A stretch of DNA of 64,000 bases from Antechinus flavipes (GCF_016432865.1 NC_067404.1:85188001-85252000), one strand, 5' to 3'; counted from the stretch's first letter, positions 98-41,749 are shown. Numbers and translations are program-made. The notes: generated by a model not told the origin, from the letters alone.

Positions 98-3000
98 TCA
101 AGAGCCCAGGGCCGAGACCACCCCCGCGGCCCCAGAAAAGGGGGCGCCCGTGCCCCCGAGCAGGGGGGCCGCAGACCCGGGAAAGGGGACCAGGTGCCCT
201 ACTGAGGCCATGTGGCCTGAGAGCACCACGGGCCCGAGGCTCGGGTAGAGCGGTTCAGTGGCCAGGTCCCCTGGGCCGGCCGCCGCCACTGCAGCTGCTG
301 CTGCTGTCCCCTGCCCGGCGGCCATCAGGGCCTGGCCCACCCGGGCCTTCTTCTTGGCTTTGCCCGACACCTTGCGGTTCCGGGTCTGGATGCCATCTTT
401 GCGCATGGTCAGTGGCCGGTTCACCTGGGGGCGAGACAAACCCAGAGGCTCTGGTACTGGGAAAAGAGGACACGCTCCCTCCCCTCCTCCCCCCTCCCCA
501 GAGAATGGGTTTTTCTCCTACCGTTCCCCTCCCCCCAGCTCAGCAATCCAGGAGGAAGGGCCTAGGTCTTAGAAATTCTCTGGCCCAGCCCTCCCCCCAA
601 GTCACCCAGGCCCCAACCCAACTATCCTAGTGTCACCCATCAAATACAGCAAGCTACAAAAGGGGCAAACCCTAAGGGCGGAGGCCTCTCTCATCGGCCC
701 AAACCGGGAAGGTCCTCGGCCTGGGGGGAGGGGCGGGGGGCTTACGTTGTGCAGCTTGTAGTAGAGACCACAAGCGTTACACACGGGCTCCCCGCTGGCA
801 TTGCGCCGCCACAGGGTCGTCGTCGTCGTCTGGCAGTTGGTGCACTGGGTACCTGCTCGCTTACTGACAATCTGGAAAGAGCCCAGGGGCTGGGTGAGGT
901 CCCTGCTGCCCCGCTGCCCTCTTCTCACCTCCCTGGCCCCGAGGCCCGCCCTCCTCACCAGGCGCTTCTTGGGCCTTATGAGGGGACGGTTCTGTCCATT
1001 CATCTTGTGGTACAGGCCACAAGCGTTGCACAGGTAGTGCCCGGTACCGTCTCGACGCCACAACGGGGTAGCCGTCGCTCCACAGTTCACGCACTCTCTG
1101 GCCTCTGCTTGGGAGGAAAGGCAAGAAATTGGACAGAAAGTGAAAGCTGACCCCAGCTAAGCCCCTGGACCCTTTTCCTCCCCTTGAGTGTCCCTCCCGA
1201 CCCGAGTCTGGGTCCTCACCACAGGGAGACAGGGGAAGCGCCCCACGTAGCTTCGGAGAGTAGGCGTTACCTCCACCTGCCACTGAGAGGGGGCTTCCGG
1301 CAGGTGAGAAGAAGGCAGCGGTGGTGAAGTCAGGAGGACTGGCTGCCACATAGTGGGGGGGCCCCACGGCCGCTGGGACACCCAGGGTGAGCAGGTCTGG
1401 ACTCATTCGCTCTGTCTTCAAGGTCTCCAGGAAGCCCCTTGGGCTCCCTTTCACATCAGGGCCCTCAGGAGCTGGCTGTGGAGAGGCCTCTCGAACAGCC
1501 GGGGCCAGGGCAGAGGCTGGGTACAGCCCCGCCTTCCCGTAGGCCCAACCTGTGGCCGTGTAGGGGGCTCCCCCGAGCCCTCCATCCATCCAGTTGAGAA
1601 TTGGGTACACTTGGCATACTGTAAGGAGAGGTAATGGAAGGGCGTGATGGTCAGGCCCCAGGTCCCTAATATCTGGTCGCCAGCAGATGAGAACCAGAGC
1701 ACTGGAAACCGGAGACTCCTGACTTCAAGGCTCTTTCCCCATTCGGTGTCTCTAGGGAGTTCACTGCTGGTCTAGTTGGACCCCTAATATTACTTCTGAT
1801 TCCCAGCATGGCTGCCGGTCAGAATAGGGACAGACAGATCCAACATACTGCACACTGCCTGGCATGTGGAAAGCCTCTGGGGAAAAGGCAGTAAGGGCAG
1901 ACACGTAGGGGGCACGTGATTTCGGCCAATCCTCAAGAAACGCTTGGTGGCTAAGCGATGGCACGCCTTGGCCCGGTGCCCCAAACTGCCCGTTCCCCGA
2001 TCCCAACTCCCTTCAGCAGCTCCTCCAGACATCCTTTCTGCTCAAGCACCTCCCTTGAGATCTAGACTCAGCCCTCACCCCAATGGAGGCTTTCCTGTCC
2101 TACTTTACTGAGCTTTCTAATCACCCCTTTGATCTCGGAGAAGAAGCTGCAGTAGGGAGGCAGGTGCCAAGACCTGAAGCTACAGAACCTGTGGCCAGTG
2201 TCAGAACCATTCCATGCTTTTTGTTTGGAGTTTTCTTTTCCCGTGTGGGGGAGGAGGGGAGAGAAAATAAAGACTTGTTAACTGGAAAAAAACACAAAGT
2301 AATCACAAAATCCCCACCAAACAGTTGCTGCTTCCATTCCCTTCCGATCCTTAGCCCCTGCCATCTGCTTGCCAGTCCAACTGCTAGCCATCACTAGTTC
2401 TCTAGTTCCTTGAGGTCCCAGAGCCCCTTTTCAGGGGGTCCAACAAGTCAAAACAAGTCTACAAGAATACCGAGACATTTTCAGATCTAAGAAAGGAAGT
2501 ATCAACAGAGCCCATATCAAAGCCTGTCCTTGGCACAGCCCCAGTTATTTTTAAGAGTGCGTGGCATCCCGAAGGCTTGACGCTGGCTCTCCATGCTCGA
2601 CAATCCGTATACCCTAACTGCTCTTTCTTGGGCCTCGTGATCTTTTGGCAGTTTTTGGAAATTATCTCCTGGCCCTCACTCATCGATGTTCTCTCCTCCC
2701 TATCTGATTTCCTTCTCAGTCTCCTTTTTTTGATTGCTCTCCACCTCCTGCCCGCCCCCTTCCCCAAAAGCCCTAGTCCCAGATCCTTTTCTCTCCTGGC
2801 TTGCCCCCCAGGAAGATTTGCTTCCTGGGTATGTTAACCCACGAGCAGATGCCCTCCCCAGATGCAGCCCCCCAGCCAGAACTCTTCTCCCGGCCCCATA
2901 CTTCCAATCACGTGCCGGCAGTCTCTCCCCACTTGCACATCTCCTCAGGGTCAGCGTGGGCAAAATAGAACTCGGGGGCTTCTGCCCTGAAAGCTTTTGT

Positions 3001-3899
3001 CTGCCCCCCGAAGGTACTCTCATCTCTCCAAAGCCAAGGAAGGTTCCTGGTGTCTGCCTCCTCCTCCACACTGACTTCTCTGGCCCTCCTCTCGGAACCA
3101 GGCAGGTACCAGGCGGATCTGGACCTTCTCCCCATGTCCACATAGCCAGCACTTCGATTTCACTCCCACTAACACTTTTCACTCAGGACCCTTACCCCCA
3201 CAGCCTTTTCATGGGTCCCCCTGCCTCCCCCTGGCCTTTTTCCGGCCCTCCCTGCTGGCCTGACCTTGTGGCTCCCTGCTCCAGAGGCAAAGATGTAAAT
3301 TCCTAAGGCGGGCCTTAAAATCCTGCCAGCCCGCACCAGGCTTTTCTGTATTTATTTTTAATGCGACCCCCCTTCCCGAGATCCACTGTTCGGGCACATC
3401 ACTATCTTGGTTGGCACCTTGCCCATTGAACGAAAGCTTGCCTAATACCAAGCTGACCTGCTCGGGGGGGAAGAGGAAGGGTGCTCCACGCCATATATGG
3501 AAGATTGGGGCCGGCTGCTGACGGGGAAGGGAAGGAGCATTTCTATGGCACCTACTGTGCACCAGGCATGGCATCGAGTACTCGTGCGATCACACGATGT
3601 GATCCGTCAGCTGGCATCACCAGTACCATCCTTCGACCACAGGGACAGAGAAGATGGCAGCCCAAAGCCCTCCCTGCCCACCCCAGGATACCTGGTGAGT
3701 GTCTGTAAGCATCAGCAGCCGGTCCCCGATGGTAGTAGGGCAGCGTGGTGGTGGCATCGCCAGCATCGGCCCCCTCGGGCCCCGAGAAGAAGAGTCCCGG
3801 CTCTTCGGTGGCACTGACGGAGGCCGACGGGGACAGCAAGGTAGGCTCAGCGAAAGAGGCCAGGGCCTCTGGCTCCCCCAGGCCGGGCGGGAAATCCAT
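98..3899 (-). CDS. GATA1: GATA-binding factor 1, 5 coding exons, ~401 aa
   Basis: Coding exons 3899-3692, 1618-1220, 1104-959, 871-746 and 424-98, all GT-AG with consistent phase (1206 nt). N-terminus MDFPPGLG...YRHSP; N-finger [19 protein letters not shown]; C-finger [41 protein letters not shown]; then [18 protein letters not shown]. Exon 2 acceptor likely at 3947/3946. Confidence 0.97.
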
Positions 3900-4456
3900 G
3901 GGGGCTCCCCGACGGTTGCGGCAGAAGCGGTGTCAGTGGTGCCTCCCTGAGGGGGGGGCAAGATCGTCAGCCCCAAGAGACCTTCCTAAGCATGGTCCTC
4001 GGGTGCTCTCCCAGCCATGGTCCAGACCCTACCCCAACTAAGTGGGCTTCCATGGGCCCAGAGCCTTGGGCTTCACACACAGGACGTGCTTGCCTGCAGG
4101 GTCCGTGCACATCTACATACGTGTAGACACACATTGGGATACAGACGCTCTAAATACACACATACACAAGCAGGATCAAGATCACATATGTACATTATAC
4201 AGGGTAACACACACACATAACACACATATGCTTGGGCAAGGGGGGGCAAAAAGCGGGGGGGGAGCACTCGGCCCCGGGGGAGACCGAGAATAAAAAGTGG
4301 GGGGGGCAGGGAAAGAGGCTCCTTCTTCTCCAGCCCTCCCCACTCTCTTCTCCCTCCCCCCCCCCCAGCCATTTTTCTTTTCTCATCTCCCTTTCTCGGA
4401 CCCTCCAGGCCCAGAGTGGGAGCTCCTTCTGTACCCTCCAGCCGGCCCTCCCCCAG

Positions 4457-4519
4457 TTATCACCCCAAGGCAGAGATAACCCTTATCTCAGGACTGGGGG
4501 ATATGAAAGCCTCTTATCA
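4457..4519. promoter_or_regulatory. Cluster of four WGATAR sites in GATA1 intron 1 (candidate intronic autoregulatory enhancer)
   Basis: TTATCA 4457-4462, AGATAA 4474-4479, TTATCT 4483-4488, TTATCA 4514-4519. AGATAA-CCC-TTATCT is a perfect inverted pair. Confidence 0.65.
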
Positions 4520-5001
4520 GCAGTCTGGGGCTAGTGTGTTCCCAGCAGGCTCAGGGGACTCCAGGCAGCTAGCTCCCAGCCCAGCCGGGCAGCCGGCTCC
4601 CATCCCAGCTTGGCCCAGTCCAGCCAGGTATGGTCCACCCCGACAGAATGGCTTTTAACTTGGAAGACTGGGGTGGGGGGTGGGGGGTGGATATGGGCTT
4701 GATTTTTTGCGAGGAAATCAGAGCTGAGGACCCTCAGGCAGGGCAGGTTCGGAGAAGGGGCTTGGGGGCCTCTGAGGGTTGGTCAGATCAGCCAGAAGAG
4801 GGATGAGAGGGGATCGGAAGGCCTGGAGATAGACTTAAGGGAGAGAAACAAGAGTTGGAGGAGGAACCCAGGTTGGAGTTCAAGCGCCCTCAAATATGGC
4901 AGGAGGGGGTAACTCAAAGATACAGCGTTAGGGCTTCGGGAGGATGAGACAGGGCTGATGTCCTCCCCAAATGGGCGGCTACAGGGCTCGGGGGCACTGA
5001 C

Positions 5002-5100
5002 CTGAGCAGGTGTTTAGGCCGAGGGAGGGGGGGCAGTCTCTCTTGGATCTCCTCAGGGTCCAGGCTGCGACCAAGACAACAGTGTCTCCCTCCCTCACAC
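5002..5100 (-). other. GATA1: Candidate non-coding first (erythroid IE-type) exon of GATA1
   Basis: Minus-strand donor CTCAG|GTCAGT at 5002/5001, downstream of CACCC-type boxes (~5130-5230) and the double-GATA element. The 5' end is a guess. Confidence 0.4.
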
Positions 5101-5656
5101 CCCCCTCCTGCTGTGGCTACAGGCGGGGCCAGGGGGTGGGGGGGGAGAAGGGGCCCAGCCTTGGGACCGCCCCCTGCTGGCACCAGTGCCCGAGCATGGC
5201 TTAGATGGCCGGGGGCACCTTCCTCACCCGCCCATCCCAGACCTCCCCCACCAGCCCATAGGCTTCTCCGTCTGCTCATCTCCTGCTCCCCGAGCTCTGC
5301 CCCACCTTTCCGTGCCGGTCTCTCAGAGCCTTGGTTGCCATTGCTCTGGAACGGTGGCCCTCCAGGCCTGGGGCCGGACCCGGTGCTCTCCTCTCCTCTC
5401 AGCCCGTGGGGCTGGCTGGTCTCTAGTTCATTGCAGTCCTGGAGCTTATGTGTACCTCCATGTCTCCCTCTGTCACTCTTGTTCTCCCTTAGGTTTTTCA
5501 GTGTGTGGGGGGTCAGATTAGGTCCTGGCAAGAAGGCCTATGATATACTGGGACAGATGCCCAAACTAAGATGTTGGGGAGGATGCGGGACACCCTTCCC
5601 CTTCCCCCTCCCCCCCACTTACACCAGCTCCCTGCTGGGCCAAGGCTGGGGCCTGC

Positions 5657-5676
5657 TGATAAGTCTTATCAGATGG
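5657..5676 (-). promoter_or_regulatory. GATA1 upstream palindromic double-GATA element
   Basis: Minus strand reads CCATCTGATAAGACTTATCAGC, nearly identical to the mouse/human Gata1 dbGATA element as recalled (CCATCTGATAAGACTTATCTGC). Confidence 0.85.
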
Positions 5677-6006
5677 AGGGCCGGACCTCGGCTGTTGGGG
5701 TTGAGGCAACTAGCAGCCCCACAGGAGGTTGGGGGAAAGAGAGCGGATACTGGGGCCTCCCTGGCCCCGTCTACACCCCTCACCCCCTGCTTTCAGCCCC
5801 TGTGTGACAGGGAAATTCATTCATCTTACTCTCTCCCCCTCCTCCCCCAAATAGTGGCACCTTGGTCCCCCTGCTCCGAGGGCAGAGAGCAGGACAGGTG
5901 GGAATCATCAAGCCCAAGTCACATCTGGGAAAACTGAGGCCTTCTTCCCATTTCCCAGTCACTTTGAATATTCCCACTGACCCTGCCTTTGGAGTCCAAT
6001 GTAGTG

Positions 6007-6154: not shown

Positions 6155-6205
6155 CAATCTCTTGGGGCCAGGCAGAGCTGGGTGGAGGCCAGGGCAGTGG
6201 GAGGC

Positions 6206-9200
6206 TCATCCCTCCGGGAGGTAGGGCCGAATCAGCTCCGGATCTGGCAACGACTCAGCCAGGGGCTGCTCTACCCTGAAGTCGTGGACATGAGGAGGGC
6301 CTGGTCGGGCCTTGGGGCCAGGCCCCCCCCCACGCTGTGGAATGGGCAGCTCTGAGGGGTGGGCTGGCAGCGGGGCTCTGAAGAAGTACTCATGTAGCAG
6401 GGCCTGTGGGGATGTGGGGGGAGTGAGAAGGGATGGCCCGGCCCGGCCCAGTCCTGTCTCACCCCTATATCCCTGGCTCCATCCCTTGTGAGTTCCCCAG
6501 TGGGCGCCGCTTCCTCCACCTTCAAAGCAAGGGCTGGCTGAATTCGCCCGACACAAAAAAACTGGAGGTGGGGGTGGCGACAGGGGGGAGAAACGGTTCC
6601 CCTTTGAGCACTGTGGCAAGCCGGCAGATTTTTATCAAGCCCCAGGCACAGTTAAAGAGAAACAAGGGGACTGTTCCTCAAAGGTGTCCATTAAAGCGGG
6701 CCCCCTACTGACTTAAGTGAAGGAGACGTGCAAACATTTGGACAGTAAGCAATTTTTATCTGTTCGTTAAAGCAGGCCCCCTAAGGGCACAAAACAGGAT
6801 CCCATCAGACATGAACTGGGACTTTAGTCAAGGGCAGCTGAAACCCCACTCCTAGCTGTTCGGTAAAACAGGTCCACCAAGGCCCCCAAGCTCGGCGAGC
6901 CTCTGGTGGTCTGCTCTGAGTTACCTTATTTAAGTACATGGAGGCGAGCCAGCCCTCTAGAGCGGCCAGTGGCCTCTGAGACTGAGGGACTTGCCTCAGG
7001 GCACCCAGCTGGTCCTAATAAGAGGCAGGATTTGAACCCAGGGCTTCAGACCGCAAAGCCAAGAGCCCTTCCCATGTATCAAAGCAGATCCACTCGGGTC
7101 TCTCATGGGATCGTCTGTCAGTTCTGAGCCTCTGCTAAGATGCTATTTCCTCACCCTAAAGCCAGAAGCATACTCTTCCTCTTCTGATCTCAAAGCACCT
7201 GTGACCTCCTCTTTCCAGATGTGATGTGCCAACCTGCTGGGGCCTCGGATCACGTTCCTTGGCCAGGGGAAGGGGAATCCTTAACTCCAGAGGGCGGAGC
7301 GGGCCAGCTGCCTCGCCTTCCCCCTGCTTGCCTTCCCAGCACTAGCAACTCACTCCCCAGCAAAGTAGCTTTCTAAAGGAGGTTTTGGGCTCGTGTGGGT
7401 GGCGGGGGAGAGGAGAACAGGCCCTTCTCTGTCACACGGGAAGAAGCGGGAGGCCTGGGCGGAGCCCACCCTGGGCTGGAGCTGGGCGGGGGTCCTTCTG
7501 TAACAGTTCTGTTCCTTATCTCCCCCCCCCCAGTTGTGCTGGGCTTCCTTTCACATACCAGCAGTAGTAACAGAAAGTATCCTATGCCAGCCAATCAGTG
7601 TTCCCATAAGGCAGCTCTGTGGGCCCTCCCCTGGCCCTGGCCTTGGGTGGCCCTGTCAGCGGCTCTCTAGGTCCTGCCTGCCCACTCATCTCCAGGCCCT
7701 TCACCCCTTGCCCTGTTCACACTGGGCCCCCACCTGTGCCTCTTTTCACCCCAGGTTCTCGAGTTTGGTGCCTGCTGCTGTTTGGCCTCCAAGCCCTCTG
7801 AGCTCTCTGCTCGCCCCTTGCCCAGCCGTGCCCGTGGGGGCCGCCCCAAGGACCCGTTCTCCCACCCCCATTGGGCCTTCGCCATAGCTAGCGGCCCCTC
7901 CCTTCTCTCACTCCCTTCTTGGCTGAGAAAACTCAAGGCCGTCTTTGGGGAGTTCCCACATTTCTCTACGTCTCCTTGCCAAGCCTGCCCTACTTTCTCC
8001 TCTCCCACTCTGACCAGGGAAGTCCCATGGAATCACTCCTTCCGGTCCCCCCCCTGACCCCCCCCCCCCGTCTCTCTTTTTGTACATCTCCGAACTCCAA
8101 AGGCCGCAAGCTCTGCTGCCCCCCCACCCGGTTTTTAGTCCCTCACAATCAGACTCGCAGTAGCCTTCTCTGGCTCCTTTTCTGCCCCCCAAGTGTGGGC
8201 GCTCCCGTGGGATGGGGCCTCGCACAGAGTAGGAGCTTCTTGACCATTTGGACACAGGTGATTTCCAAATCCCCAGCCTCTCTGGCCCTCCAGTCAGATG
8301 GCACACCATCAGCTGTTGGCTGGCTATCTCCTCCTAGGTGTCCCTTGTGCATCTCAAAGTCCTGGCAGAGAAGGCTCAGTACCCCCAGGCCCCGGCCAGT
8401 GGGGTGCGAACTCCCGCCCCTGGGTTCTCTTGGGCCGTGGCCACTGGCCCGTTAGCTAAGCCTTGGCTCCGCAGGGAACTCCCTTCCTCTAGTCTTTCCG
8501 CTCAGCCCGTGTCATTGAGACGAGGCCTTTGGGGTGCTACAGACCCCCTAGCCCGGTTGTGCGGGTCCAGGCACTGCTCCCTGAACTCAGCCTCCTGCTA
8601 CCTACTGAGGCTCCCTCAGAACTGCCAGGAGCCTGAGTTCTTTGTACTTATTGATCTATGTGGGCCACTAGGTGGCACTAGAACGGCTAGAACAGCAGCC
8701 TGGGGAGCTGCAAGACTCATCGTGGTGAGTTCAAATCCAACCTTGGACCCTTACTATCTGTGTGACCCTAGGCAAGTCACTTCACCCTGTTTGCCTCAGT
8801 ACCCTCATCTGTAAAAGGAGCTGGAGAAGGAAAGGGTCGACCGCTTCGAGATCTCTGCTGAGAAAACCCCCAATGGGCCACGAAACGTGACTGAAAAATG
8901 ACCGCATGACAACTGACCTATGCGGGTTGTGTACCGGGAGTGGGGGGGGGGGGCGCGGAGAGAAGGGGGAGTCAGCTCCCTGACGGCTTGTCTCATCTGT
9001 GTCCCTAGGACAGGCCTGGGGGCACGGTCACTATCTGGCTAGAGATGGGAGGGGGCTCCCCGAGGAGGGGGAAGTCAGGTCCACTTCCTCTTAGCCTGTG
9101 GAGGTGCACCTGGGAGAGGGGAGGGGGATACCTGATCGGCCTGGATCCGACTTCGAGGGGGGTAGACAAGAAAGCGACTCAGGAGCTGGAGGGCTTCGTA

Positions 9201-11953
9201 GGAGGCGTCGGGCAGCACCTCGCGCAGGGGCAGGGGCAGCTGCTCCTTGAATGAGATCTTGTTGTAATCTGGGAGCTCGGTGATCCCCTGGGGAAGGACC
9301 AGAGGGACGCAGGAATTATGGGGCCTCGACGATGACCTGGCGGAAGCCCTCTCCCGCTCCCCTGCTACTCACTGGCCACACCCGAGGGCTGGGGGTCCCG
9401 AGGACCCGCAGGACACAGCACAGCTGTTCGATGTCATTCTCCCCGGGGAAAAGAGGGGAGTTGTTCAGGAGCTCCCCGAAGATGCAGCCCACGGCCCTGC
9501 GGGCAAGAGTAGACACGGCTCGGGCGGCTGTGGCCCACCAGCCAGCTGCCACCTCCCGGGCCCCCACTTGGGCCTGCTCGAGGCCCTCTTCCTCTCACTC
9601 CCTGCCTTACCATAGGTCCACACCCTCATCATACTGCCTGGCTCCGTACAGAAGTTCTGGAGCCCGATACCACCTGCAGCCGAGGGAGGAAACGTCGTTA
9701 GCGGTGGAGAGGGGGGAAAGGTGGTGGCCCCGATGGGGCTAAAGAAGCGTGCTGACAAATGCCTCCTATCCCAAGCCCGCAAGTGATGCTGCTCCCCCGT
9801 CCCCCACCCCCCATCCTGACTCGCTCACACTTGTCCCTGCTACCAGGCTTGGGCATGTACCTCGTGGCCACCTGGTGGCTATAAAGTCGGTCACCCTTGT
9901 GGGAGAAAACACGAGCAAGGCCAAAGTCGGCAATCTTCAGCTGACCCGAGGAGCTGAGGAGCAGGTTGGCTGGCTTCAGGTCCTGAGGAAGGAAGAAGGA
10001 AAGAAAGAGAGGAAAGGAGGGGGGGGGGAGGAGAAGGGAAAGAGAGGAAACAAGGAAGAAGGGAGGAGGAAGGAGGAAGGAAAAAAGGAAGAAAGAAGTC
10101 TAAGGCCCAACATCCAGTCCCCTTGCCAAGGCTCAACTGAGCCCCCCGCCCCCGGCCCCACCCATCCCCAGCCCAGCACCCCCCAAAAAAAGCTTGGGCA
10201 CTGGCCCTCTGGGTATCCATACCCGGTGTACAATGTTGTTGGCGTGGCAGAAGGCTACACCCTTGAGCAGCATTTGCATGTACGCTTTAACCTGAGCTGG
10301 GGCCAGAGGCCGCTTCCCATGCCGGATGACCTCAGACAGGTCAGAGAGCATGAACTCAAAAGCCAGGACGAAGCCTGCTCCATGCGGGAACACAGCCTTC
10401 AACTTCACCACCTGTGGGTGCCAGGGACACCTGATAAGGGCACTTAGAGAGTTTTACAGAAGGCAGGAAATCAAGGCCGAAGGGATCGCTACACCCGAGC
10501 CCGCCTGCCACCAGACTTCTCTTATTATCTTTGGGAAACTGAGGCTCGAGGTGTTGCCGGATCATCCAGCCAGACCTGAGCCCAGACTCGTTTCCTAGGC
10601 TTGAGGAAAGCGTGAGACCTGAAGGTGATTCAAGACCGCCTGGCCTGGGCCTCCATCAAAAGGCGCCCGCGGCTCAGCGTCCGCAGAATCGTCTCACGGG
10701 CCGAGAAGCAAAGGCATCAAATGCCCCAGGCTTCACGGGATGAAAGCAAGGGAGCTCCGTGGGTGCCCAGGGACAGACCAACCTATTCAGGGCAACTAAG
10801 GCAAAGCCACTTACAGATGGGCGCATCGAAGCCCTCTGCAGCTGGGCCCCGTTGTACGCAGAGCACCAGCCTCAGGCACCTACAGGCTGGATGAGGCTGG
10901 CAAGGCCCTCAGGGCCGTCGGACAAGACTGGTCCGACCTCCGAGGATGCTCGGGAGGATCACGTGTTCGGGACACGCTTACTTAGCACAGCGCCTAGCGC
11001 CTGGTGCCTGGTACTTGCAGGCTCTTAATAAATGCTTGTTCTCTGCCCCTGTCCACCTCCGCCCACCGCCAGCGTGGAAACATCGATTCAATTTATAGAC
11101 CAGGAGAAACCAGAGCAAAGCAAAAGGTGGCCAGTCTGTCAACAAACATTTCTTAAGGACCTACTGTGTGCCAGGTGCTGGGGATACAAAGAAAGGCAGA
11201 CCAAAGTCCCTGCCCTTGATGTGAAGGAAGAAACATGGGAGGTGGCAGGCAAGGAAGGAAAAGGAGGCGGGCAAGGAAAGGCCTTTCCTGCTCTTAGTGG
11301 CAAAGGCCCAAAGCCTGGAGGCCACGGAACGGCATAAATGCCAATCAGAAGACTCCATTTCGGGGAAGCCCAGAGGCCCAGAGGGGCGATGAGGTCAGTC
11401 TGGGCTGGAGACGTCCAGAAGCCCCTGGGTGATGGCTGCCAATGGCCGAGGAGAAAGGGCAAGGCTGGCCGGGTACATCTGACGATGGTTCACCAAGAGA
11501 TGTGCGCTGAACCCATGAGTGCCGATAAGCTCATCAAGGGTTGGACGAGAGAGTTCGAGACAGAGCTTGGTTTGTCCCCCGTGGTTCGTGGGCCGCTAGG
11601 TGGCTTGGAGGAGAGAGCATGGCCCCAGGTAAAAAGACCTGAATTCGAATCCAGCCTCAGACACATGTGATGCCAGGCAAGTCACGTCATCTCTGTCTGC
11701 CTCGGCTTCCTCAAATGAACAATGAGGACACAAAGAGCACCTCCCTGAAGTGAGATCGTATTTGGGAAGTGCTTAGTCCACTGCCTGGCACATAGTAGAC
11801 ACCATATTAATACTGGCAACGGTGATGGTATTGGTGAAGATGCAGCAGCAAGGGAGTCCAAGGAGTCAGAGATGTAGAAGGAGAATTAGGGGAGAGGGGA
11901 GAGACAGAGACGTAGGGAGGAGGGCATAAAACAGAAATACAGAGAGAAGGGGG

Positions 11954-11993
<40 letters not shown>

Positions 11994-26700: not shown

Positions 26701-26935
26701 TCATCCTCCCCTTCCTAGCACCTGGGATCTCCCTTCCCCCTGATCTCTCCTTCTTAGCACTAGGGGTCTCCCTTCTCTCTCATCTTCCCCTCCCTAGCAC
26801 TCAGGATCTCCTTTCCCTCTCATCCCCCTCTAGTACTTGGGGTCTCCCTTCTCTCTGATCCCTCCTTCTTAGCACTTGGGGTTTCCCTTCCCTCTAGTCC
26901 CCCCTCCCTAGCACTCAAGATCTCTCTTCCTTCTC
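20781..26935. repeat. Array B: ~6.1 kb CT-rich minisatellite upstream of the first CDK20 coding exon
   Basis: Monomers built on TAGCAC(T/C)(A/T)GGGGTCTCCCTTC with alternating spacers (ctctgatccctccttct / tctctcatcctcccc / cctctcatccccctc). These give ~57 bp and ~110-115 bp composite units; the 57-bp period is visible as a 19-aa repeat in ORF 25012-25257. Confidence 0.97.
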
Positions 26936-27479
26936 TGGCCAAAGTCCCCAGTAGCCCCTCACCCCAGCTGGAAGCTTGGAGCCTCCTCCAGTCCCTCAGC
27001 TTTCCCAGCCCCCCCCCTTGTCCCCTCTGCTGGGGCAGTACTTGCTAACTTAGCCTTCACAGGGACTCTTTACCAGCTGCAAAGCCATGAAGGCCCCGCA
27101 CTGCCTAAATTTGCCCTCCCACCCCCAGAGCCGCTTCTCACCAGGCACCTTTTCACTGTGAGCTTGGACAGCCTTTTCCAGGGAGTCCTCAGGGACCTGA
27201 GTCCCCTCCTCCAGCGGGACAGATGGCTCAGCACCCGCACCCCTTGGGGCTTTCCCCTCAAAGGCGAGAGCTTATGCCACCTCTTCGGGGAAGCCCTCTT
27301 GGCCTCGGTAAGTACCATTCCAGGCTCCAATCCGAGACTGCCACATGCCCTCTCCTCCCTCAGTTTGGGAAGCACTGGAGCCCCCAGCCCTAAGAGCCTC
27401 CTCAAGGCTCAGCTCCTCCAGGCAATCCGCTGTGCCTGCGTCCTGGAGGGTGGATCCCCGTGGGCTGGGGGCTCCCTCC

Positions 27480-28250
27480 TCTCTCCGTTTGGTGCGGATC
27501 CCGGGCCCGCCTCTGCTCCGGATCACTGCCTCCGGAGGGTCCCCGCTACCGTGTGCGGCCCGGAGCCAGCACGAGGCTGCCTTCTGTCACCTAAAGACTC
27601 GGCGAGCCTCCCGGACAGGCCCGGATGTACACCCCAAAGGGAAGAGGCCCGCCCACCTCCTCCCCCGTAGCTCTCCGCCTCGTCCCCGGCCCGGCCCGGC
27701 CCGGCCCCGGCCTTGGCCTGGCCCGGCCCGGCCCGGCCCGAGCCACCTCCAACCTCCTCCCAGCAGCCCGGTGTCCCGCGGGCAGCTTCCTTAGCAACGA
27801 TTCGGCGCAGGCGCACTCGGGCCCCTCAAGGTGGCGAGCCCGGGCGGCTCGGTCAGATGACACGGTTTGGAAGGGCGGGGCCTGCCCGAAGTCAGGCCGG
27901 AGCCTGGAGAGGGGCGGGCCCAGTGCGCCGTCACGTGGTCCTCCAGGCTCGGGCCCGCCCAGATCCGGGAGGGAGCCGAGTCCGAAGCTGTGAATCTAGA
28001 AGGGCAGTGCCCCGTCACGTGTCCCTAGAGCTCCGCCCCGCGGGGCAGGGCGGGAACTGGACTTTTGTCTTCGGCCCTTTTTGTGCCGGGTTCCTCTCCC
28101 CCTGGCGCCGGTGGAGGGCAGGGGCAGGGGGGGTAGGAGTTCTTTCCCCAGCCTTTAAGTAGCAGGGCTCAGCCCGCCGCTGCCTGTTCCCTCTCAGAGA
28201 GCAGCGTCTTCCGGCGCGGGCCACTTCCTCTCTTCCCTGACCAGTTCTGT
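27480..28250. promoter_or_regulatory. CpG island, probable CDK20 promoter and non-coding first exon
   Basis: Dense CpG, GC boxes (GGGCGG), CACGTG at ~27930, (GGCCC)n. An acceptor-like CCCTTATTCCACAAG| lies 7 nt before the CDK20 ATG (20732/20731), implying an upstream non-coding exon. Confidence 0.65.
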
Positions 28251-28850: not shown

Positions 28851-29379
28851 CCCAATTGCATTTTAATTTTTTTGGACACTTCTGCTCCATAGAATAATCA
28901 CTGCCAGGGTCAATGATCCTGATATTTTAGTGACCAAACTTCAAAACTAATCCTTATCAACGATAACAAAGGGAGATGATGCATTCCCAGCCCGGTTACT
29001 ACTGGGTCTCGGAAAAATTGGGGAACTGGATCCTCAGGGGCCAACATCCCTTTAGGAACCCTGCCAGGAACGGGTGCCAAGGACAATCTTTTCCTTTCCA
29101 CCACATGAAAAAGGGGATTGTGGAGATTTCATAAGAATTTCCCAAATCCTTTCTTCACAATGCATATGGATGATAAAGGCACAAAGTGCCAAAAATGAGG
29201 AGTTGGAGATAACATGAAATTGCAAGCCTGGGTGAGTACAAGGGTAGTGGTACCCTCCACAGTAATAGGGAAATTAGGAAGAAGGGAGGGCTTCGGGGGA
29301 ACAAATGAATTCCATTTGGAAGTGGAGTTTAAAGACCTGCGACATCTAGTTTGAGCTGTCTAAAAGACAAGTGAGCTGT

Positions 29380-29900
29380 GAGGCTGAAGGTGGGGAGAGA
29401 GGGTAGGGTTGGATAAGTAGATCTCAAATTCATCAAAAGAGAGACAATTGAATCCACAGAGTTGATGAAATATCACCAAGTGAAAAAGTAGAGAGAGAGA
29501 AGGTCTAGGACAGCCTTGGAGACACGTGGCTGAGGAGCCAACAAAAGAGACGGGAACGGGGAGAACCAGGAGAGAGCAGTGTCATGGAGAGAGTGTCCAG
29601 GAGAGGGTGATGGCCAAGTGTACAAGACTGCAGAGAGGGCAAGAAAGATGATCAAGAAAAAGCCATGACAGATGCACTGCTTACTTCGGAGAGTTGTTAG
29701 TTTCAGCCGAATAAAGAGGTTGGAGGCCAGATGATGTACTCAGGAAGAGAGGGAGTCGAGAAGTGGAAATGCCTATTAGATAGCCAGCTTTCTCAAGGAG
29801 TTTGGCCACTAAAGGGAGGAGAGATGGACAGAGCGAGCGAAAGGTTTTGGAGGATGGGGAAGACATGAGGATGTTTGCAAGCAGCCCGGAAGCTGCTAAA
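29380..29900 (-). mobile_element. Ancient L2 LINE ORF2 (RT) fragment
   Basis: Minus-strand translations SLLPLVAKLLEKAGY, SGLQPLYSAET, IIFLALSAVLYTW and LHDTALSWFS match degenerate L2 RT motifs (PISLLPFxAKLLEK, SGFRPxHSTET, LLDLSAAFDTV). Confidence 0.65.
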
Positions 29901-30213
29901 CTAGATTGAAGATTTGCGAGAGAGTGAAGGAGCTAGCAGGGACAATTTGGGGGGAAAGATGGGACAGAAGGGGATTCCTTGTTTACCTTAGTAAGGAGAG
30001 GGGCCACCTCTTCAAGTGAGATAGGGTGCGTCATACAGAAACAGTGGCGGATGAGTCTCAAAGATGTATTTCAGTCACTGTATGTTTAAGGCCCAGATGT
30101 CTCTTATCTGTGATGGCCTGCCAACCAATGAACGTGGTAACCCTGTGCAGGAATAGACTTCAAACTGGCCCCGAGATCATGTGCCAAGCTGATGAGGTTT
30201 AGAGTGGTCTAGA

Positions 30214-30288
30214 TCCCTGGTGGTCTAGTGGTTAGGATTTGGTGCTTTCACTGTCACGGTCCGGGTTCCATTCCCGGTCGGGGAACCA
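30214..30288 (+). pseudogene. tRNA-Glu(TTC) retropseudogene with genomic CCA
   Basis: TCCCTGGTGGTCTAGTGGTTAGGATTTGGTGCTTTCACTGTCACGGTCCGGGTTCCATTCCCGGTCGGGGAA+CCA. Anticodon TTC at 30247-30249. Shows CpG-decay substitutions, a damaged B box (GGTTCCATTCC) and no oligo-T terminator. Confidence 0.85.
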
Positions 30289-30355
30289 TAAATATGATGA
30301 GGTTTGGAGTGGTCTAGATCCCTGGTGGTCTAGAGGTTAGTGGCTATAAGAGAGT

Positions 30356-30800
30356 TGTTAAGAATCCCCTTTAAATCGGCCACAGGTTTTAGGAGTGAAA
30401 GAATTCCCTCGTTCCCGAATATTAGTTGCAAAATGAAAGTTTATTGTTGGATAGAAATCAGTTTACCTCTCAGAGACTGACTTCTACGGTGGCAGACCTG
30501 TGGAAAATGGAGTTTTGCACCGAGAATGCAGTTATCAGTGGACAGAAGGTTCTGACAGCAGAGGGAGCTGCCAAGGTCCATCTGCAAAAGACCTTCGTTG
30601 ATGAAAGCTCATTATATTGGCTGTCTTGGTGGGCGTTGGGAAGCTAACCAGAGCAGATCAGAAGCAGTGGGGGCTGGGAGAGCCCAAGTTGGCTCAGATC
30701 CAGTGGGGGCTGGGATAAGCCCGGATCTGCTATTGGAATTCAAAGGGATGCTTTTTGACCCGGATTTGTGAACCAAAGGCGCTGGCATCCTGGAAAGACA
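30356..30800 (-). mobile_element. LTR-like element (U5 end at 30356); far boundary uncertain
   Basis: Minus strand ends ...GGGGATTCTTAACA with AATAAA ~85 nt upstream. No TSD identified. Confidence 0.4.
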
Positions 30801-31762
30801 ACTTGTCTGGGGAGGATCTACCTCAGCCAGGAGCGGCTGGGAATCTGAAAGGAATCACACTTGCCAGGTAAGCAAGGGGGCCCTTAAAACAGGCTGCTTC
30901 CTCAAGCAAAGGGGCTGCCAAACCCCACTGCCGCTTCACTTCCAGTGAGGATGTGACCCTATGGCCCCGGCCACCCATCTGTAGGACTGTGACTCTGGCT
31001 CCCAGTGCTCCCGCCGCTTCGTCACTCGCCCGTCGCCACGGGACTTTGAGGGGGGCAAAAGTGTGAAAACGGTATGGGTGCTCTCTTTTGACCAGCACGA
31101 AAACGATTTAAGTGAGACAGACTTGTACGAAGTCATCGGCCTCACTTTCTGTTCCTGTCGTCAGGGTCCAGTGGCGAGACAGAGCCATCGAACTGCCTGG
31201 CGAGGCCCAGGATGCGGCGCGTGACCCTGGCGTCTTCATTGTCCTCCATGGCACCTGCTTCAGCTGCCTCCGTGGCCGTTGAAACCACCAGACCGTTCAC
31301 ATCTGCCCATTCTGCGGGCAAAATCTTTATGGGCTTACGGGGAGACATTTCCCGTAATCCCCCGATGGCTTCGAGGACCATCACCTACCCTCACTCACCT
31401 AGGTTTAGCTTTGTTTGCCAAAGCTTTTTTTTTTTTTTTTTTTTTTTTACTAGGGTGTGGCTACAGCACACCTTACAGCTTCCTGGAGCCACAGGTGAGA
31501 GATGGGAGAGGTGGAAGTTAAGGAGGCTGAGCAACCCCCAAAAGCCTTCCAACCAGAGGGCTTTGTCCTCCTGAACACCCCGTACCCACACCTCCAACTG
31601 TGATGGAGCATCATCTTGCCGAACTCTTCTCGGCGTAGTGACCAGCTGTGATCGCGGAGGACTCTCCAATCTAACAGGGGCTTGTGTTCTAGCTTTTTCA
31701 GTGGAGGGTAAGGAAAGGAAAGTGCGAGGGGGAGAAGATTATTTGTTTGAAAAGAAAATGTA

Positions 31763-31907
31763 GGGACAGCTAGGTGATGCAGTGGATAGAGCCCCAGCCC
31801 TGAAGTCAGGAGGACCCGAGTTCAAATCTGGCCTCAGACATTTAATACTTCCTAGCTGTGTGACCCTGGGCAAATCTCAACTCCAATTGCCTCAGGAAAA
31901 ATAAAAG
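31763..31907 (+). mobile_element. WSINE1/SINE1-type marsupial SINE, full length, with TSD
   Basis: GGGACAGCTAGGTGATGCAGTGGATAGAG...GAGTTCAAATCTGGCCTCAGACA...CAATTGCCTCAG plus A-rich tail; 12-bp TSD AAAGAAAATGTA (31751-31762 and 31908-31919). Confidence 0.9.
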
Positions 31908-32498
31908 AAAGAAAATGTAATCATACAAAAGGTTAAGACCCCCTTCAAAAGCATGCCCAGGGCTGCCCTGGGCAGCAGAGAGCTTGAAGGCACTTTTGCC
32001 CCTTTTTAACCTTCTGCCATCTCCCTCATCTATCACATCCTAACTGCCCGCCAACCTTTCCTCAGTCTCGCATTTTGCCCTTAGGTGTGAATGGCATATG
32101 TCCATCGATGAAAAAACTGGATTAAAGCCAGGAGTGTGCTGGAGCCAGTTCAGATTGAGTCCCCCCATTATGTTTTCAGTGTGATGATTTACTATAACCT
32201 CAGAAATTAGGGCATTTGTGGCAGTTGGGTGGTGCTGCAGCTGATAGGGAAGTGCTCCCTGGGGTCAGGGAGAGTGATCTTCCCGAGTCCAAATATGACT
32301 TCACTTACTAGCTATGTCACCCTAAAGCAAATCGCATGGGCCTGTGTGCCTCCGTTTCCTCATCTGTAAAATGTTAGAGGAAAAAATGGCAAGAAAACCC
32401 TAAATAAAATCAGACACAACAATGAGACAAACAGATCAAGGATTGACCGATTTGAGGTTTGCCTAGACTTAAGAAAGTGATGGAGAAAAGGTCAAGGT

Positions 32499-32854
32499 TG
32501 TCAGCAGGGCTTGGGGTGGGGCTGATTCTAGTGCCCCTCCTCCTCCCCCAAGGAAAGTTACTGACCAGAAAGAGCCAGAAGCCACCCTAGTCACCTCGAT
32601 GACTCTATGGCTTAGGTGTCACAGGCCCTTCCGGCGCCTGAGGGTAAGGCAGTGAAGGGGGCTTTCTCCTGGTCGGGGCCTGCGTGAGGGGAAGGTGGTG
32701 CTGGTGAGAAAGGGAGAGAGGGGAGCTTCATGTCGGCCTGGAATTATCCTATCTTTTTGGACTCTCGCTCAGTGTTGTGAAATGGTTCAAATAAAACAAA
32801 AGCCTCTGCTTTGTCTCTAGTTTCTTATGTGATTGATTTGATTTTCACTTGACA
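32499..32854 (+). mobile_element. Possible solo LTR
   Basis: TGTCA...TGACA termini and AATAAA ~60 nt before the end. No TSD found. Confidence 0.35.
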
Positions 32855-34430
32855 TGTGAAGGATCTGTTTGCTAGTGAAGCTCTGGAACAAAGCAGCACC
32901 ATGACAAGGTGCCCCGTGCCGGCCTGGCTTGGCCATTCCCAGTGCTCTGCACCTTCCCGCGTGTTCTTCTGGATGTCGGCTGCACCGTGTCTTTCTCGGG
33001 GTGTACCGGATGGAGGTCAGCTGCTGAGGCCGGATCTCACTCTGATTGTTCCTCAGGATCTCGGCAGTGCCACCACTCTGTTTTTCTTAATTGTCCACGG
33101 TGTTCTGAGTGCTCTTTGCCTTCCACTGCACAGCCTTTGGTGTCGCCCTCCTTGAGATGCCTTGGGGGAGGCCGGGCTCTTTTTGCTGAGGCCCAGGGTG
33201 GGAGCACACCTCATTTGCAAACTTGGCCCATGGGCAATACTCTGTGCCCCAGCACGGTGCCCAGAACAGGCGATGCTCAATTCTCATAGTTATCTAAACT
33301 ACTCAAAGGCTTTGAGGACACGATGTTGTTGGGTTTTTTTTGAACAAGTGCACGTACTTCCAGTACAGAAATCCAAATGGTTACTGTTTGTATATTGTGT
33401 CCTTGCTCCAGCACAGTGGGACCGACTCGGGGCCCAAAGCACTCCAGCGGAGGGGAGGGCTGTAGCTGTGCAGGCCCCGGAGGCCTGCTGCAGAGCAGGG
33501 CCAAGTTGGGCCACAGCAGTGCTCAGGTCTGTTAAAGGCAGGAGAATTCGAGTCCTTCTGTCCTGGCACAGGAGGTATATTTCTGGACCCCATTGATGGG
33601 GGCTGAAGAGTAGGGAGAGATGCCAACTCCTAGGAGGCCAGTTAGAGAAAAGGGAGCCCTGGAAAGCAGAATGGCAAAAGGCAGGCCTGTTCTAGCTCAC
33701 CGCTCACTATGATGTCAAACCGGCTGCCCTTCTCCACAAAGACCACCAAGGGGTGGCAACGGGCAGGAGGTGAGAGGATCTGAGAAGCCCCTGAGAATGC
33801 CTCTCATCAGACAAAGATTTGGCAGGGCGCCTCCCCTGCACTCCTGAGGCAAACAAAGGGGATGATGGCACCAAAGCGTTCCCGATGTTCTTGCTGCTGC
33901 TCAGGATCACCCTGTTTACACTGAGACACGGATCTGAACCGCTGAGGCTTGTTGGTAACCTCCCCCCCCCCTCCTCCTCCGCAGATGTTCTGCTCCCGGA
34001 ATCCCCAAGGTCAAAGTTGCCTATCGGCAGCCCTCGGGTCCCTTCCAACAGGGGCATTTGATGGGTGTCCTGCAACCTCCTCTCGAGCTCTGCCCCAAAC
34101 AGATTCAAATGTCACTGGGAAACACGGAACGAGATCCATCCAAATCCAACGTGGCTGTTACCGTGTGGCTTTCTAAGTGTGCTAGGTAACCCACTTCTAT
34201 TCGACTTGGACACCATTCTTCTAAGAGACCTTGAGGAACTCACCCTTCCAAGGCGATAGGGCCAGGAGTAACATCCCAGCCCCTCTTCACAGGCAGGGCC
34301 AGTCAGCTTGCCCTTAAATGGTACTGAAACATCCTCTAGGCCTGGTTAGTGGAAGGGTCCGAGAGCTGAGTCCACCATCCCCATTTCCTCATTCCCCGAA
34401 TACAGAGCAGCCCCAAGAAGGGTCATGATG

Positions 34431-36662: not shown

Positions 36663-38472
36663 TCACTGGTACTGTCCGTAGCCTGGGTAACTGGGGGGCG
36701 GGGCAGAACCTTCCTTGGGGGGCAGCTGTCCAGGATCTTCCAGGAAGGGGGGTGCTGGAAAAAGACAAAAGAGGGGAGAATGGTAGAGCTGAGACGCAGA
36801 AAAAGGGAGAGATCTGAAGCCAAAAAGAGAAATTCAGGAAGCAGAGACTAAGGCCCAAAACAGGACCAGCAGGAGAAAGGGAGGAGCGATGGCCCCGGGA
36901 CAAATACAGGAGCCCTTTGGCGAGATGGCAAGCTAAGACACAGATGTCAGAGTCAGAGTAGCCTGAGCAGAGGAAGGAGAGTGAAGGGGGTGGCAGGAGG
37001 CCTCCTCAGCAGGCCTTAGGAGATTGACTCACTGTTCCGGAATTGCTGGGCTGTGTAGCGGGTGAGGAGGATGCCCACACCTTCGATCAGGGCCAGCAGG
37101 ATTCCTCCCATCATGGCCGATCCAACCATGGCCAGGGGCCCACCTGGACAACAGGAAGCGAGTGTGTGACTGGCCCGATTCCCTCAGGGCCTCTTGCCCT
37201 CCCCACCTCCCCACAGTTCTAAGGCTGAAGACAAAAAGAAGTGATAGAAGTTGGGGAGAGGGAGGGAGGGTGGTTCAAGTCACTCACTCCGAGCTGCCAG
37301 CACAGCACCAGTGAGAGCCCCACTAGTGATAGAATTCCATGGGTCTTCTTTCCCACGGAGTCGGACGAGCCCACAATCAATGGTAGAGAACAGGCCACCC
37401 CAGACAGCAAAGCTACCTGGAAGAGGAGTTTTGAGGTGGTAGAGAGATGGTGAGCTTGGCATTTGGAACTTCCCTCACTGTGCTCTAAGCCTGACCAACT
37501 GTCCCCAAGTGCAGTCCCGCTTTTGGCATTTCCAGTCTGGGTTCTCTGCACTCCGCTCCATCAAGGCCCCTTACCTCCAATCTGGGGAGCCCGGATTCTC
37601 ACTGCATTGATGCTACCTCGGAACCGGTGCCGGATGCCCTTAGGAGGGAACAGAGACAGGTCATGGACGGGAAAGTGAACAAGGGCCCCTCCGAACAGTG
37701 GCAAGGGTCCCCTCCCACCCCCAGCTTATGTGTGGGTGGGTAGAAGGTAGGACAACTAGGGGATCATGGGAGACAGGCCCTTTGGAGTAATTTATTGGCT
37801 TTCCTTCCCAACTCATTGGCATTTCACAGGAAAGGGGAAACTGAGGCTTAGGGGACTCACTACTGGGGCATTGCGGAAGCCCTTGACAGCCTGGAAGACA
37901 CCTCCCCCGATGACTCCCATGGTGAAGGCCCCACCGCAGTCATCCACAATCCTCCAGGGGCTGCAGAGGTTCGGACAGGGGGTGAGAGAAGTCTGAGGTG
38001 TGCTAGAAGAGTCCCCCTCCCCTTGCTCTCATCTCTGAAGGCCTCTGGGAGCATCCCCAGCAGTGGGAGGGGAGGAGAAGAGAGGAGAGGGGCAGAGCCA
38101 AGAGGGAGGGGTCCCCCTAGTCGGGCCTGCCAGCTGCCTAGCCACAGCCCCTCCTTCCCACTTTGAGGAGTCCCAGCTCCCTCTCCCCCCCTCCCCCCCT
38201 CCCCCCCCCCCCCCTCCCAGAACGGTCCGTCGCAGCCGTGGGGGAGCAGGAGAGGTCAAGAGCCAAGAGCAGCCGCGAGCCCTCCCCCTCTCCGCCTCTA
38301 ATAGAAAGGTCTCGGCCCAGGCCTGGGACAGGCCAAATGTGGCGCCGCCGACGGGGGGAGGGGCTAGCGATGAAGGCCAGACTCCCCCTACTTCGGGGCT
38401 TCAAATGTCGGCCCCGTCTCTGCCTCTCGCTCACCCTACTGCGTACCAGGGCTCACGTGCGTACTCCTCCAT
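36663..38472 (-). CDS. TIMM17B: Mitochondrial inner membrane translocase subunit Tim17-B, 6 coding exons, 173 aa
   Basis: Exons 38472-38447, 37960-37861, 37638-37575, 37416-37288, 37143-37033 and 36754-36663. [24 protein letters not shown]...[15 protein letters not shown]...; AATAAA at 36268-36273. Confidence 0.96.

Positions 38473-39227: not shown

Positions 39228-41749
<2,522 letters not shown>

What the first reader, a model, noticed from the sequence alone, without database searches (positions are those of the whole stretch)
98..38472. CDK20 sits inside the X-linked GATA1-TIMM17B cluster, at an inversion breakpoint relative to eutherians
Seen: intact 8-exon, 346-aa CDK20 directly upstream of and co-oriented with GATA1; GATA1 is on the same strand as TIMM17B, SLC35A2, PIM2, OTUD5 and KCND1; no HDAC6 or ERAS, and no recognisable PCSK1N, in the interval. 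Known (recalled): human CDK20 is on 9q22, and human GATA1 is on the opposite strand to TIMM17B with HDAC6-ERAS-PCSK1N in between. Inference: CDK20 was ancestrally X-linked next to GATA1 and moved with its introns to an autosome in eutherians (or the reverse), and a GATA1-containing block was inverted. The breakpoint lies in the repeat-rich 20-36 kb interval.
Basis: partly seen in the sequence, partly recalled or inferred. Interest (0 to 1): 0.75.

Follow-up and report, generated by a model that had tools for sequence, protein, structure and literature searches.

The report
CDK20 beside GATA1: ancestral gene order
In this marsupial (yellow-footed antechinus) the kinase gene CDK20 sits intact between TIMM17B and GATA1; frog, fish, turtle, koala and amphioxus show this is the old arrangement, so placental mammals moved CDK20 away and flipped the GATA1-HDAC6 block.

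Summary
The window is Antechinus flavipes CM028223.1, 100% identical to a fetched locus.

**Gene order.** On the minus strand lie TIMM17B, an intact CDK20 and GATA1. CDK20 has 8 coding exons, all GT-AG, 346 codons. It ends 2.3 kb upstream of the GATA1 ATG. PQBP1 is on the plus strand; SLC35A2, PIM2, OTUD5 and KCND1 follow on minus. HDAC6 lies 0.7 kb beyond GATA1, just outside the window.

**The N gap** sits in CDK20 intron 2 beside a purine array. Its two flanks map 154 bp apart in koala intron 2, so there is no mis-join.

**Polarity.**
- Koala has CDK20>GATA1>HDAC6.
- Xenopus has PQBP1, TIMM17B, CDK20>GATA1 in the same orientations.
- Turtle has TIMM17B>CDK20, and teleosts have CDK20>GATA.
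- Amphioxus has CDK20 next to SLC35A2.
- Shrew and gerbil lack the linkage. Human and sheep gene lists read GATA1-HDAC6-ERAS-PCSK1N-TIMM17B, and human CDK20 is at 9q22.1.

The marsupial order is therefore ancestral. Placentals exported CDK20 with its introns and inverted the GATA1 block.

**Breakpoints.** One lies within about 0.5 kb, at window 5699-6205. The two 6-kb arrays are lineage-specific insertions and do not mark breakpoints.

No paper stating this was found, although public annotation already shows the genes. The scan's earlier notes on this DNA (s1-208927, s1-208984) agree.

The parts
98..3899 (-). GATA1 coding region: ATG at 3899, stop at 98-100, N-finger 1019-1093, C-finger 770-844
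   Evidence: Pfam GATA E=1e-30. Exon 3 is 100% identical to 'erythroid transcription factor [Antechinus flavipes]'. Coordinates.
4446..4521 (.). GATA1 upstream block conserved with gerbil, 2.75 kb upstream of the gerbil ATG
   Evidence: blastn against L008, 80% over 79 nt, E=5e-11
5646..5698 (.). Second GATA1 upstream block conserved with gerbil, 4.7 kb upstream of the gerbil ATG. It is the last placental GATA1-side homology before CDK20.
   Evidence: blastn against L008, 81% over 53 nt, E=1.4e-5, colinear with the first block. Lies inside the stretch of first-reader note s1-208927.
6206..6403 (-). CDK20 exon 8 (65 codons plus TGA)
   Evidence: tblastn to opossum and dog CDK20 C-termini. Shrew homology ends at the stop codon. 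Splice check.
7159..7260 (-). Alternative terminal exon used in Tasmanian devil CDK20 isoform X4
   Evidence: 97% identity to P0238 residues 281-314
9132..10411 (-). CDK20 exons 7 to 3: 9287-9132, 9496-9373, 9673-9611, 9982-9861, 10411-10223
   Evidence: tblastn, Pfam Pkinase, GT-AG and phases
11941..17913 (+). Purine-rich degenerate tandem array in CDK20 intron 2, a lineage-specific insertion
   Evidence: TRF, composition. With the gap it replaces 154 bp of koala intron 2.
18219..18431 (.). Assembly gap (N) inside CDK20 intron 2
   Evidence: Flanks are colinear with koala.
19036..19149 (-). CDK20 exon 2
   Evidence: 100% identity to the koala, tammar and opossum peptides
20650..20724 (-). CDK20 exon 1, with the ATG at 20724
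20818..26915 (+). Pyrimidine-rich tandem array (periods 39/40, 79 and 115 bp) between the CDK20 ATG exon and its conserved upstream CpG island, a lineage-specific insertion
   Evidence: TRF. Replaces about 170 bp of koala sequence.
27081..28047 (-). Block conserved with koala that lies directly upstream of the koala CDK20 ATG. It holds a CpG island at 27.5-28.5 kb and is the likely CDK20 promoter/5' UTR (inferred).
   Evidence: 77% over 1034 nt against koala. GC 0.73 and CpG o/e 0.76.
28870..33750 (.). Gene-free intergenic DNA, colinear with the 10 kb upstream of koala CDK20
   Evidence: No gene called in the koala interval.
36666..38472 (-). TIMM17B coding region (ATG at 38472)
   Evidence: Pfam Tim17, ORFs, MEEYAREP at 38472, C-terminus
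39299..39842 (+). PQBP1 exons, on the plus strand
   Evidence: ORF peptides read by eye. A WW-domain gene sits at the same place in Xenopus. Pfam gave no hit for one exon.
43673..45611 (-). SLC35A2
   Evidence: Pfam Nuc_sug_transp E=4e-87. ATG.
46703..48881 (-). PIM2
   Evidence: Pfam Pkinase, motifs. The PIM2 name comes from reading the peptides and from position.
50344..60133 (-). OTUD5
   Evidence: Pfam OTU, peptides, ATG
63210..63593 (-). KCND1 last coding exon. The name rests on the peptide read by eye and on position.
   Evidence: Pfam gave no hit.

Best explanation
The window shows the ancestral vertebrate gene order of the proto-X cluster, kept in a marsupial: SLC35A2, PQBP1, TIMM17B > CDK20 > GATA1 > HDAC6. 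CDK20 here is the single, intact, intron-bearing orthologue of placental CDK20. On the placental stem two things happened (order not shown, inferred). The block starting at GATA1 (GATA1-HDAC6, probably with ERAS-PCSK1N) was inverted, so HDAC6-ERAS-PCSK1N came to lie between GATA1 and TIMM17B. CDK20 was also cut out as genomic DNA and landed on an autosome (human 9q22.1). One cut lies between the CDK20 stop codon and the conserved GATA1 upstream element (window 5699-6205). The other lies between TIMM17B and the CDK20 promoter. The two 6-kb tandem arrays and the N gap are later insertions of the antechinus lineage, in CDK20 intron 2 and just upstream of its ATG exon. They have nothing to do with the rearrangement.
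For: Gene model: 8 exons, GT-AG, 346 codons. NCBI calls a 346-aa product at this place in the same assembly. Koala has CDK20>GATA1>HDAC6 with the same 2.3-2.4 kb spacing and is colinear over 34 kb. Xenopus laevis has WW gene(-), Tim17(+), TAFA(-), CDK20(+), two-finger GATA(+). Painted turtle has Tim17(+) then CDK20(+). A cyprinid has HCFC1-like(+), CDK20(+), GATA(+). Goodeid fishes have fused CDK20-GATA models. In amphioxus CDK20 lies 1.4 kb from the SLC35A2 orthologue. Placental state: shrew CDK20 is followed by an F-box/WD40 gene, with no GATA or Tim17 nearby. Gerbil GATA1 has no CDK20 exon within 10 kb. The human order is GATA1;HDAC6;ERAS;PCSK1N;TIMM17B;PQBP1 (PMC1523211), and sheep X coordinates give the same order (PMC13225777). 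Human CDK20 is at 9q22.1 (PMC11734941). Orthology: marsupial and placental CDK20 are sister clades, 100/99 support. All eight exon peptides align end to end in shrew, frog, fish and turtle. Breakpoint: gerbil homology reaches window 5698 and shrew CDK20 homology stops at 6205.
Against: The position of ERAS and PCSK1N in marsupials was not seen, so the far end of the inversion is inferred. The turtle shows no GATA1 within 10 kb downstream of CDK20. The catshark shows no neighbour within 10 kb. The GATA genes next to CDK20 in frog and fish were not proven to be gata1 rather than gata2/3. That assignment rests on product length and on HCFC1, TIMM17B and PQBP1 as neighbours. No afrotherian, xenarthran, monotreme or bird was examined. 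A second CDK20 copy in this genome could not be searched for. That CM028223.1 is the X rests on size, gene content and the tammar literature.
Confidence: 0.85

Rival explanations
1. The marsupial arrangement is derived: CDK20 was inserted next to GATA1 in marsupials, and the placental order is ancestral.
For: None found. The turtle lacks GATA1 within 10 kb of CDK20.
Against: Frog, teleosts, turtle (TIMM17B>CDK20) and amphioxus (CDK20-SLC35A2) carry the linkage.
Confidence: 0.03
2. Assembly artefact: the scaffold join at the N gap, or collapse in the arrays, wrongly places CDK20 exons 1-2 and TIMM17B next to GATA1.
For: A gap at 18219-18431 flanked by about 6 kb of low-complexity array.
Against: Both gap flanks map 154 bp apart and in order in koala intron 2. 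The whole 34 kb is colinear with koala. Exons 3-8 are contiguous with GATA1, and exons 1-2 with the upstream block. The devil, koala, tammar and opossum models join exon 2 to exon 3. The same order is found in frog.
Confidence: 0.02
3. The X-cluster CDK20 of marsupials is one of two old paralogues. Placentals kept the other, autosomal copy, so there was differential loss and not relocation.
For: A second copy could not be searched for in this genome. The list includes a turtle entry named 'CDK20-like'.
Against: The tree follows the species tree, with marsupials sister to placentals and short branches. Only one CDK20 per marsupial appears among the named hits, each on an X-sized scaffold. The linkage predates vertebrates. 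No outgroup examined shows a 9q22-type copy.
Confidence: 0.07

Closest known systems
Placental Xp11.23 cluster GATA1-HDAC6-ERAS-PCSK1N-TIMM17B-PQBP1-SLC35A2-PIM2-OTUD5-KCND1 (human list PMC1523211; sheep coordinates PMC13225777)
   Same: The same genes from TIMM17B to KCND1, in the same order and relative orientation. GATA1 is followed by HDAC6 on the same strand.
   Different: Here GATA1-HDAC6 points away from TIMM17B instead of toward it, CDK20 sits between TIMM17B and GATA1, and no ERAS or PCSK1N lies in between.
Gene traffic off the mammalian X (mostly retrocopies; my own knowledge, not tested here)
   Same: A gene that is X-linked in one therian branch is autosomal in the other.
   Different: CDK20 kept all its introns. 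The move was therefore at the DNA level, and the X copy was not retained in placentals.
Conserved microsynteny, or genomic regulatory blocks with bystander genes (my own knowledge)
   Same: A tight tandem CDK20>GATA1 pair is kept from teleosts to marsupials. GATA1 upstream conserved elements abut the CDK20 3' end, and read-through models are annotated in koala and a goodeid fish.
   Different: No regulatory dependence was tested. Placentals broke the pair without losing either gene.
Known reshuffling of the marsupial X relative to the human X. The tammar X activity map lists GATA1 among X-borne loci (PMC3046482).
   Same: GATA1 is X-borne in a marsupial, on BACs shared with TBC1D25 and WDR13.
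   Different: That paper's text, searched for GATA1, does not name CDK20 in the passages shown.

Membership tests
CDK20 (CCRK) orthologue | Kinase domain with the PNQALRE helix and complete catalytic motifs | tested here: met
   [17 protein letters not shown]|DLKPAN, DFG and APE are found. Pfam Pkinase on the exons.
CDK20 (CCRK) orthologue | Best relatives are named CDK20, and the gene groups with mammalian CDK20 | tested here: met
   Exon 3 finds CDK20 proteins. 87-100% identity per exon to marsupial CDK20. The tree used the devil, koala, tammar and opossum proteins as proxies for the window.
CDK20 (CCRK) orthologue | Uninterrupted 346-codon reading frame with the conserved exon structure | tested here: met
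   8 exons, GT-AG, 1038 nt, TGA. The same exon limits occur in shrew, frog, turtle and fish. The joined model itself was not searched or folded.
Ancestral (outgroup-shared) linkage TIMM17B-CDK20-GATA1 | The same adjacency and orientation in lineages that branch outside therians | tested here: met
   Xenopus has the full trio. Turtle has TIMM17B>CDK20. Teleosts have CDK20>GATA. Amphioxus has CDK20-SLC35A2.
Ancestral (outgroup-shared) linkage TIMM17B-CDK20-GATA1 | The GATA gene next to CDK20 in frog and fish is the gata1 orthologue | tested here: inconclusive
   Only circumstantial: the frog product has 367 residues, and the neighbours are TIMM17B and PQBP1 (frog) or HCFC1 (fish), all proto-X genes. 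No GATA2/3 references were on hand.
Placental-specific inversion of the GATA1 block | GATA1-HDAC6 is oriented oppositely to TIMM17B in placentals compared with marsupial plus outgroup | tested here: met
   Antechinus and koala have TIMM17B>CDK20>GATA1>HDAC6. Frog has TIMM17B>CDK20>GATA1. In human and sheep HDAC6 lies between GATA1 and TIMM17B. The strands in human are from my own knowledge.
Placental-specific inversion of the GATA1 block | Both inversion ends located | tested here: inconclusive
   The near end is bounded to window 5699-6205 or the TIMM17B-CDK20 spacer. The far end (beyond HDAC6, ERAS, PCSK1N) was not seen in any marsupial locus.
Retrocopy or processed duplicate | Intronless, with a poly(A) tail, at a new site | tested here: not met
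   Seven introns at conserved positions
Scaffolding mis-join | The gap flanks belong to different loci or orientations | tested here: not met
   The flanks map 154 bp apart in koala intron 2, in the same orientation

The most novel reading that the evidence does not exclude
CDK20>GATA1 is part of a very old linkage group, since CDK20-SLC35A2 is already adjacent in amphioxus. The tandem pair may have been held together because GATA1's upstream control elements abut or overlap the CDK20 3' end. Read-through transcripts are annotated in koala and a goodeid fish. Placentals alone cut the pair within about 0.5 kb, between the CDK20 stop and the GATA1 enhancer-like block. They did so as part of the reshaping of this X-chromosome end, and thereby took a cilium and cell-cycle kinase off the X, away from X inactivation and male hemizygosity.
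Probability: 0.25. Interest if true: 0.6.

Novelty: new member of a known kind. Interest (0 to 1): 0.42.

Why it matters
The finding gives a clean, polarised example of a gene leaving the therian X with its introns on the placental stem. Most documented traffic off the X is by retrocopies. It fixes which of the two GATA1-locus arrangements is ancestral. That matters for comparing GATA1 regulatory landscapes: in marsupials, frogs and fish the GATA1 upstream elements lie against the 3' end of another gene. It also places CDK20 under X-linked dosage rules in marsupials but not in placentals. Finally, it shows that the two large arrays and the assembly gap in this window are harmless to the synteny claim.

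Tried and rejected
By oversight, the local sandbox megablast (window 1-12000 against fetched loci) included them. The later local run left them out.
- **The look-up of sequencing runs** gave only coded organism names. The species came and instead.
- **Opossum and devil CDK20 isoforms X2/X4** are not on record for context look-up.
- **Catshark** gave no DNA and no neighbour within 10 kb.
- **The turtle's downstream 'gene'** is proline-rich low-complexity repeat and was uninformative.
- **Non-coding homology** was not detectable between the marsupial CDK20 upstream region and shrew. The 5' limit of the moved segment therefore stays open.
- **Motif scans** for Ras, HDAC and a proSAAS-like site found nothing. 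The proSAAS motif was recalled from memory, so that test is weak.
- **Literature:** five paper searches found nothing that links CDK20/CCRK with GATA1 or describes this rearrangement. The GATA paralogon paper does not mention CDK20.
- **A reading of the arrays as breakpoint scars** was rejected.


Full report
**What is there.** The window carries one N run, at 18219-18431. Kinase and GATA motifs in the six-frame translation place both a CDK-like gene and GATA1 on the minus strand.

Exon 3 of the kinase (window:10223-10411:-) was used for the representative search. It returned CDK20 proteins and fragments. Named CDK20 proteins were then laid on the window by tblastn, and the splice sites were read.

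The result is eight coding exons:
- E1 20724-20650
- E2 19149-19036
- E3 10411-10223
- E4 9982-9861
- E5 9673-9611
- E6 9496-9373
- E7 9287-9132
- E8 6403-6209, followed by TGA

Every intron is GT-AG. The split codons read AGG and TGG. The total is 1038 nt, or 346 codons.

GATA1 runs from the ATG at 3899 to its stop at 98-100, so the CDK20 stop lies 2.3 kb upstream of the GATA1 ATG. TIMM17B (ATG 38472), SLC35A2, PIM2, OTUD5 and the last KCND1 exon are on the minus strand, and PQBP1 is on the plus strand. No Ras or HDAC motif occurs in any frame.

**Source.** GATA1 exon 3 is 100% identical to 'erythroid transcription factor [Antechinus flavipes]'. The locus fetched with that protein, L007, is 100% identical to window 1-12000. 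L007 comes from GCA_016432865.2, record CM028223.1, which is 86.57 Mb long.

The window is therefore record positions 85,188,001-85,252,000. NCBI's genes there are a 346-residue kinase, GATA1 (401 aa) and HDAC6 (1050 aa). HDAC6 starts 0.7 kb past GATA1, just outside the window.

**The gap.** The gap lies in CDK20 intron 2, at the end of a purine-rich array. Local blastn against the koala locus L002 is colinear from GATA1 to 13 kb upstream of CDK20.
- Window 11903 pairs with koala 12319, and window 18659 with koala 12165. The array plus gap (6.75 kb) replaces 154 bp of koala intron 2.
- Window 20774 pairs with koala 9951, and window 27081 with koala 9780. The second array (20.8-26.9 kb) replaces about 170 bp just upstream of the ATG.

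Both sides of the gap therefore belong to one intron, in the right order and orientation. Both arrays are insertions of the antechinus lineage. I did not try to fill or read the gap.

**Is the linkage real and how old is it?**
- Koala has CDK20 (E1-E8 at L002 10001-17300), GATA1 (19715-23511) and HDAC6 (from 24333), all on one strand. Koala 'isoform X1' is a CDK20 model that reads through into GATA1 exons.
- Xenopus laevis has a WW gene (-), Tim17 (+), a TAFA gene (-), CDK20 (+) and a two-finger GATA gene of 367 aa (+).
- Painted turtle has Tim17 (+) then CDK20 (+). No GATA1 lies within 10 kb.
- A cyprinid has an HCFC1-like gene, CDK20 and GATA, all on the plus strand.
- Goodeid fishes have CDK20 exons followed 3 kb later by GATA fingers, and fused models exist.
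- In amphioxus, CDK20 is followed 1.4 kb later by a nucleotide-sugar transporter. Its last exon finds only 'UDP-galactose translocator', that is SLC35A2.
- CDK20-like and SLC35A2-like proteins share the same longest-contig length in Saccoglossus (38,448 bp), Ptychodera, Antedon and an oyster. That suggests same-chromosome linkage, but I did not inspect those contigs.

**Placental state.**
- Shrew CDK20 has the same eight exons but is followed by an F-box/WD40 gene. No GATA or Tim17 gene lies within 10 kb. Fused CDK20-F-box/WD40 models from other placentals agree.
- Gerbil GATA1 has no CDK20 exon within 10 kb.
- The human list reads WAS; SUV39H1; GATA1; HDAC6; ERAS; PCSK1N; TIMM17B; PQBP1; SLC35A2; PIM2 (PMC1523211).
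- Sheep X coordinates give PIM2 < PQBP1 < TIMM17B < PCSK1N < ERAS < GATA1 < WAS (PMC13225777).
- Human CDK20 is at 9q22.1 (PMC11734941).
- GATA1 is X-borne in the tammar (PMC3046482).

**Orthology.** A maximum-likelihood tree of 27 CDK20 proteins puts marsupials (one clade) as sister to placentals (one clade), with 100/99 support and no long branches. The window's own spliced protein was left out. The devil protein stands in for dasyurids.

**Breakpoints.** Gerbil GATA1 upstream DNA shares two colinear blocks with the window: 4446-4521 and 5646-5698. Shrew CDK20 homology ends at the stop codon, 6205. One placental cut therefore falls within window 5699-6205.

The other cut must lie between TIMM17B (36.7 kb) and the CDK20 promoter block (27.1-28.0 kb, CpG island). 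No marsupial-placental homology was detectable there.

The order of events and the far end of the inversion are inferred. The simplest scheme inverts GATA1..PCSK1N and removes CDK20.

**Verdict.** The main inference, ancestral linkage followed by placental export with introns and an inversion, is supported, and its polarity is now settled. The claim that the breakpoint lies in the repeat-rich interval is not supported as written.

The genes are already in public annotation. I found no paper that states the rearrangement.

The scan's earlier first-reader notes on this same DNA fit what I saw. They concern a GATA1 enhancer at the CDK20 3' end and the arrays bracketing exons 1-2.

Noticed in passing
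L009:10001-24561 and L010:10001-24351 (amphioxus): CDK20 and the SLC35A2 orthologue are tail-to-tail neighbours 1.4 kb apart. In Saccoglossus both proteins report the same 38,448-bp scaffold. The CDK20-SLC35A2 linkage may predate vertebrates.
   Followed up: partly
window 20818-26915 and 27081-28500: The 6.1-kb pyrimidine-rich array sits between the CDK20 ATG exon and the CpG island that in koala lies directly upstream of the ATG. The antechinus CDK20 promoter may be 6 kb from its first coding exon.
   Followed up: partly
L002 (koala) 10001-22511; P0181 (Girardinichthys); L001/P0037: Public gene models read through from CDK20 into GATA1 exons, out of frame in koala and in frame with the zinc fingers in the goodeid fish.
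   Followed up: partly
window 9285-9287: The first codon of CDK20 exon 7 is GGG (Gly), where the koala, tammar, devil, opossum, dog, turtle and frog proteins have Glu (EITELPDY/EITDLPDY).
   Followed up: no
window 7159-7260: An alternative terminal exon of Tasmanian devil CDK20 isoform X4 is conserved at 97% in CDK20 intron 7.
   Followed up: no
L004:5800-8525 (Xenopus laevis): A TAFA-family gene lies on the opposite strand between timm17b and cdk20. Nothing comparable was seen in turtle, koala or the window.
   Followed up: partly
L005:17947-25178 (shrew); P0012, P0242: Placental CDK20 is followed by an F-box/WD40 gene, and fused CDK20-F-box/WD40 models exist in other placentals. The new neighbourhood is shared by at least two laurasiatherian orders (shrew; dingo, P0242).
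   Followed up: no
They lie in CDK20 intron 7.
   Followed up: no
L003:19300-25700 (painted turtle): The 315-aa gene called downstream of turtle CDK20 is proline-rich low-complexity repeat, probably not a real gene. GATA1 is not within 10 kb there.
   Followed up: partly
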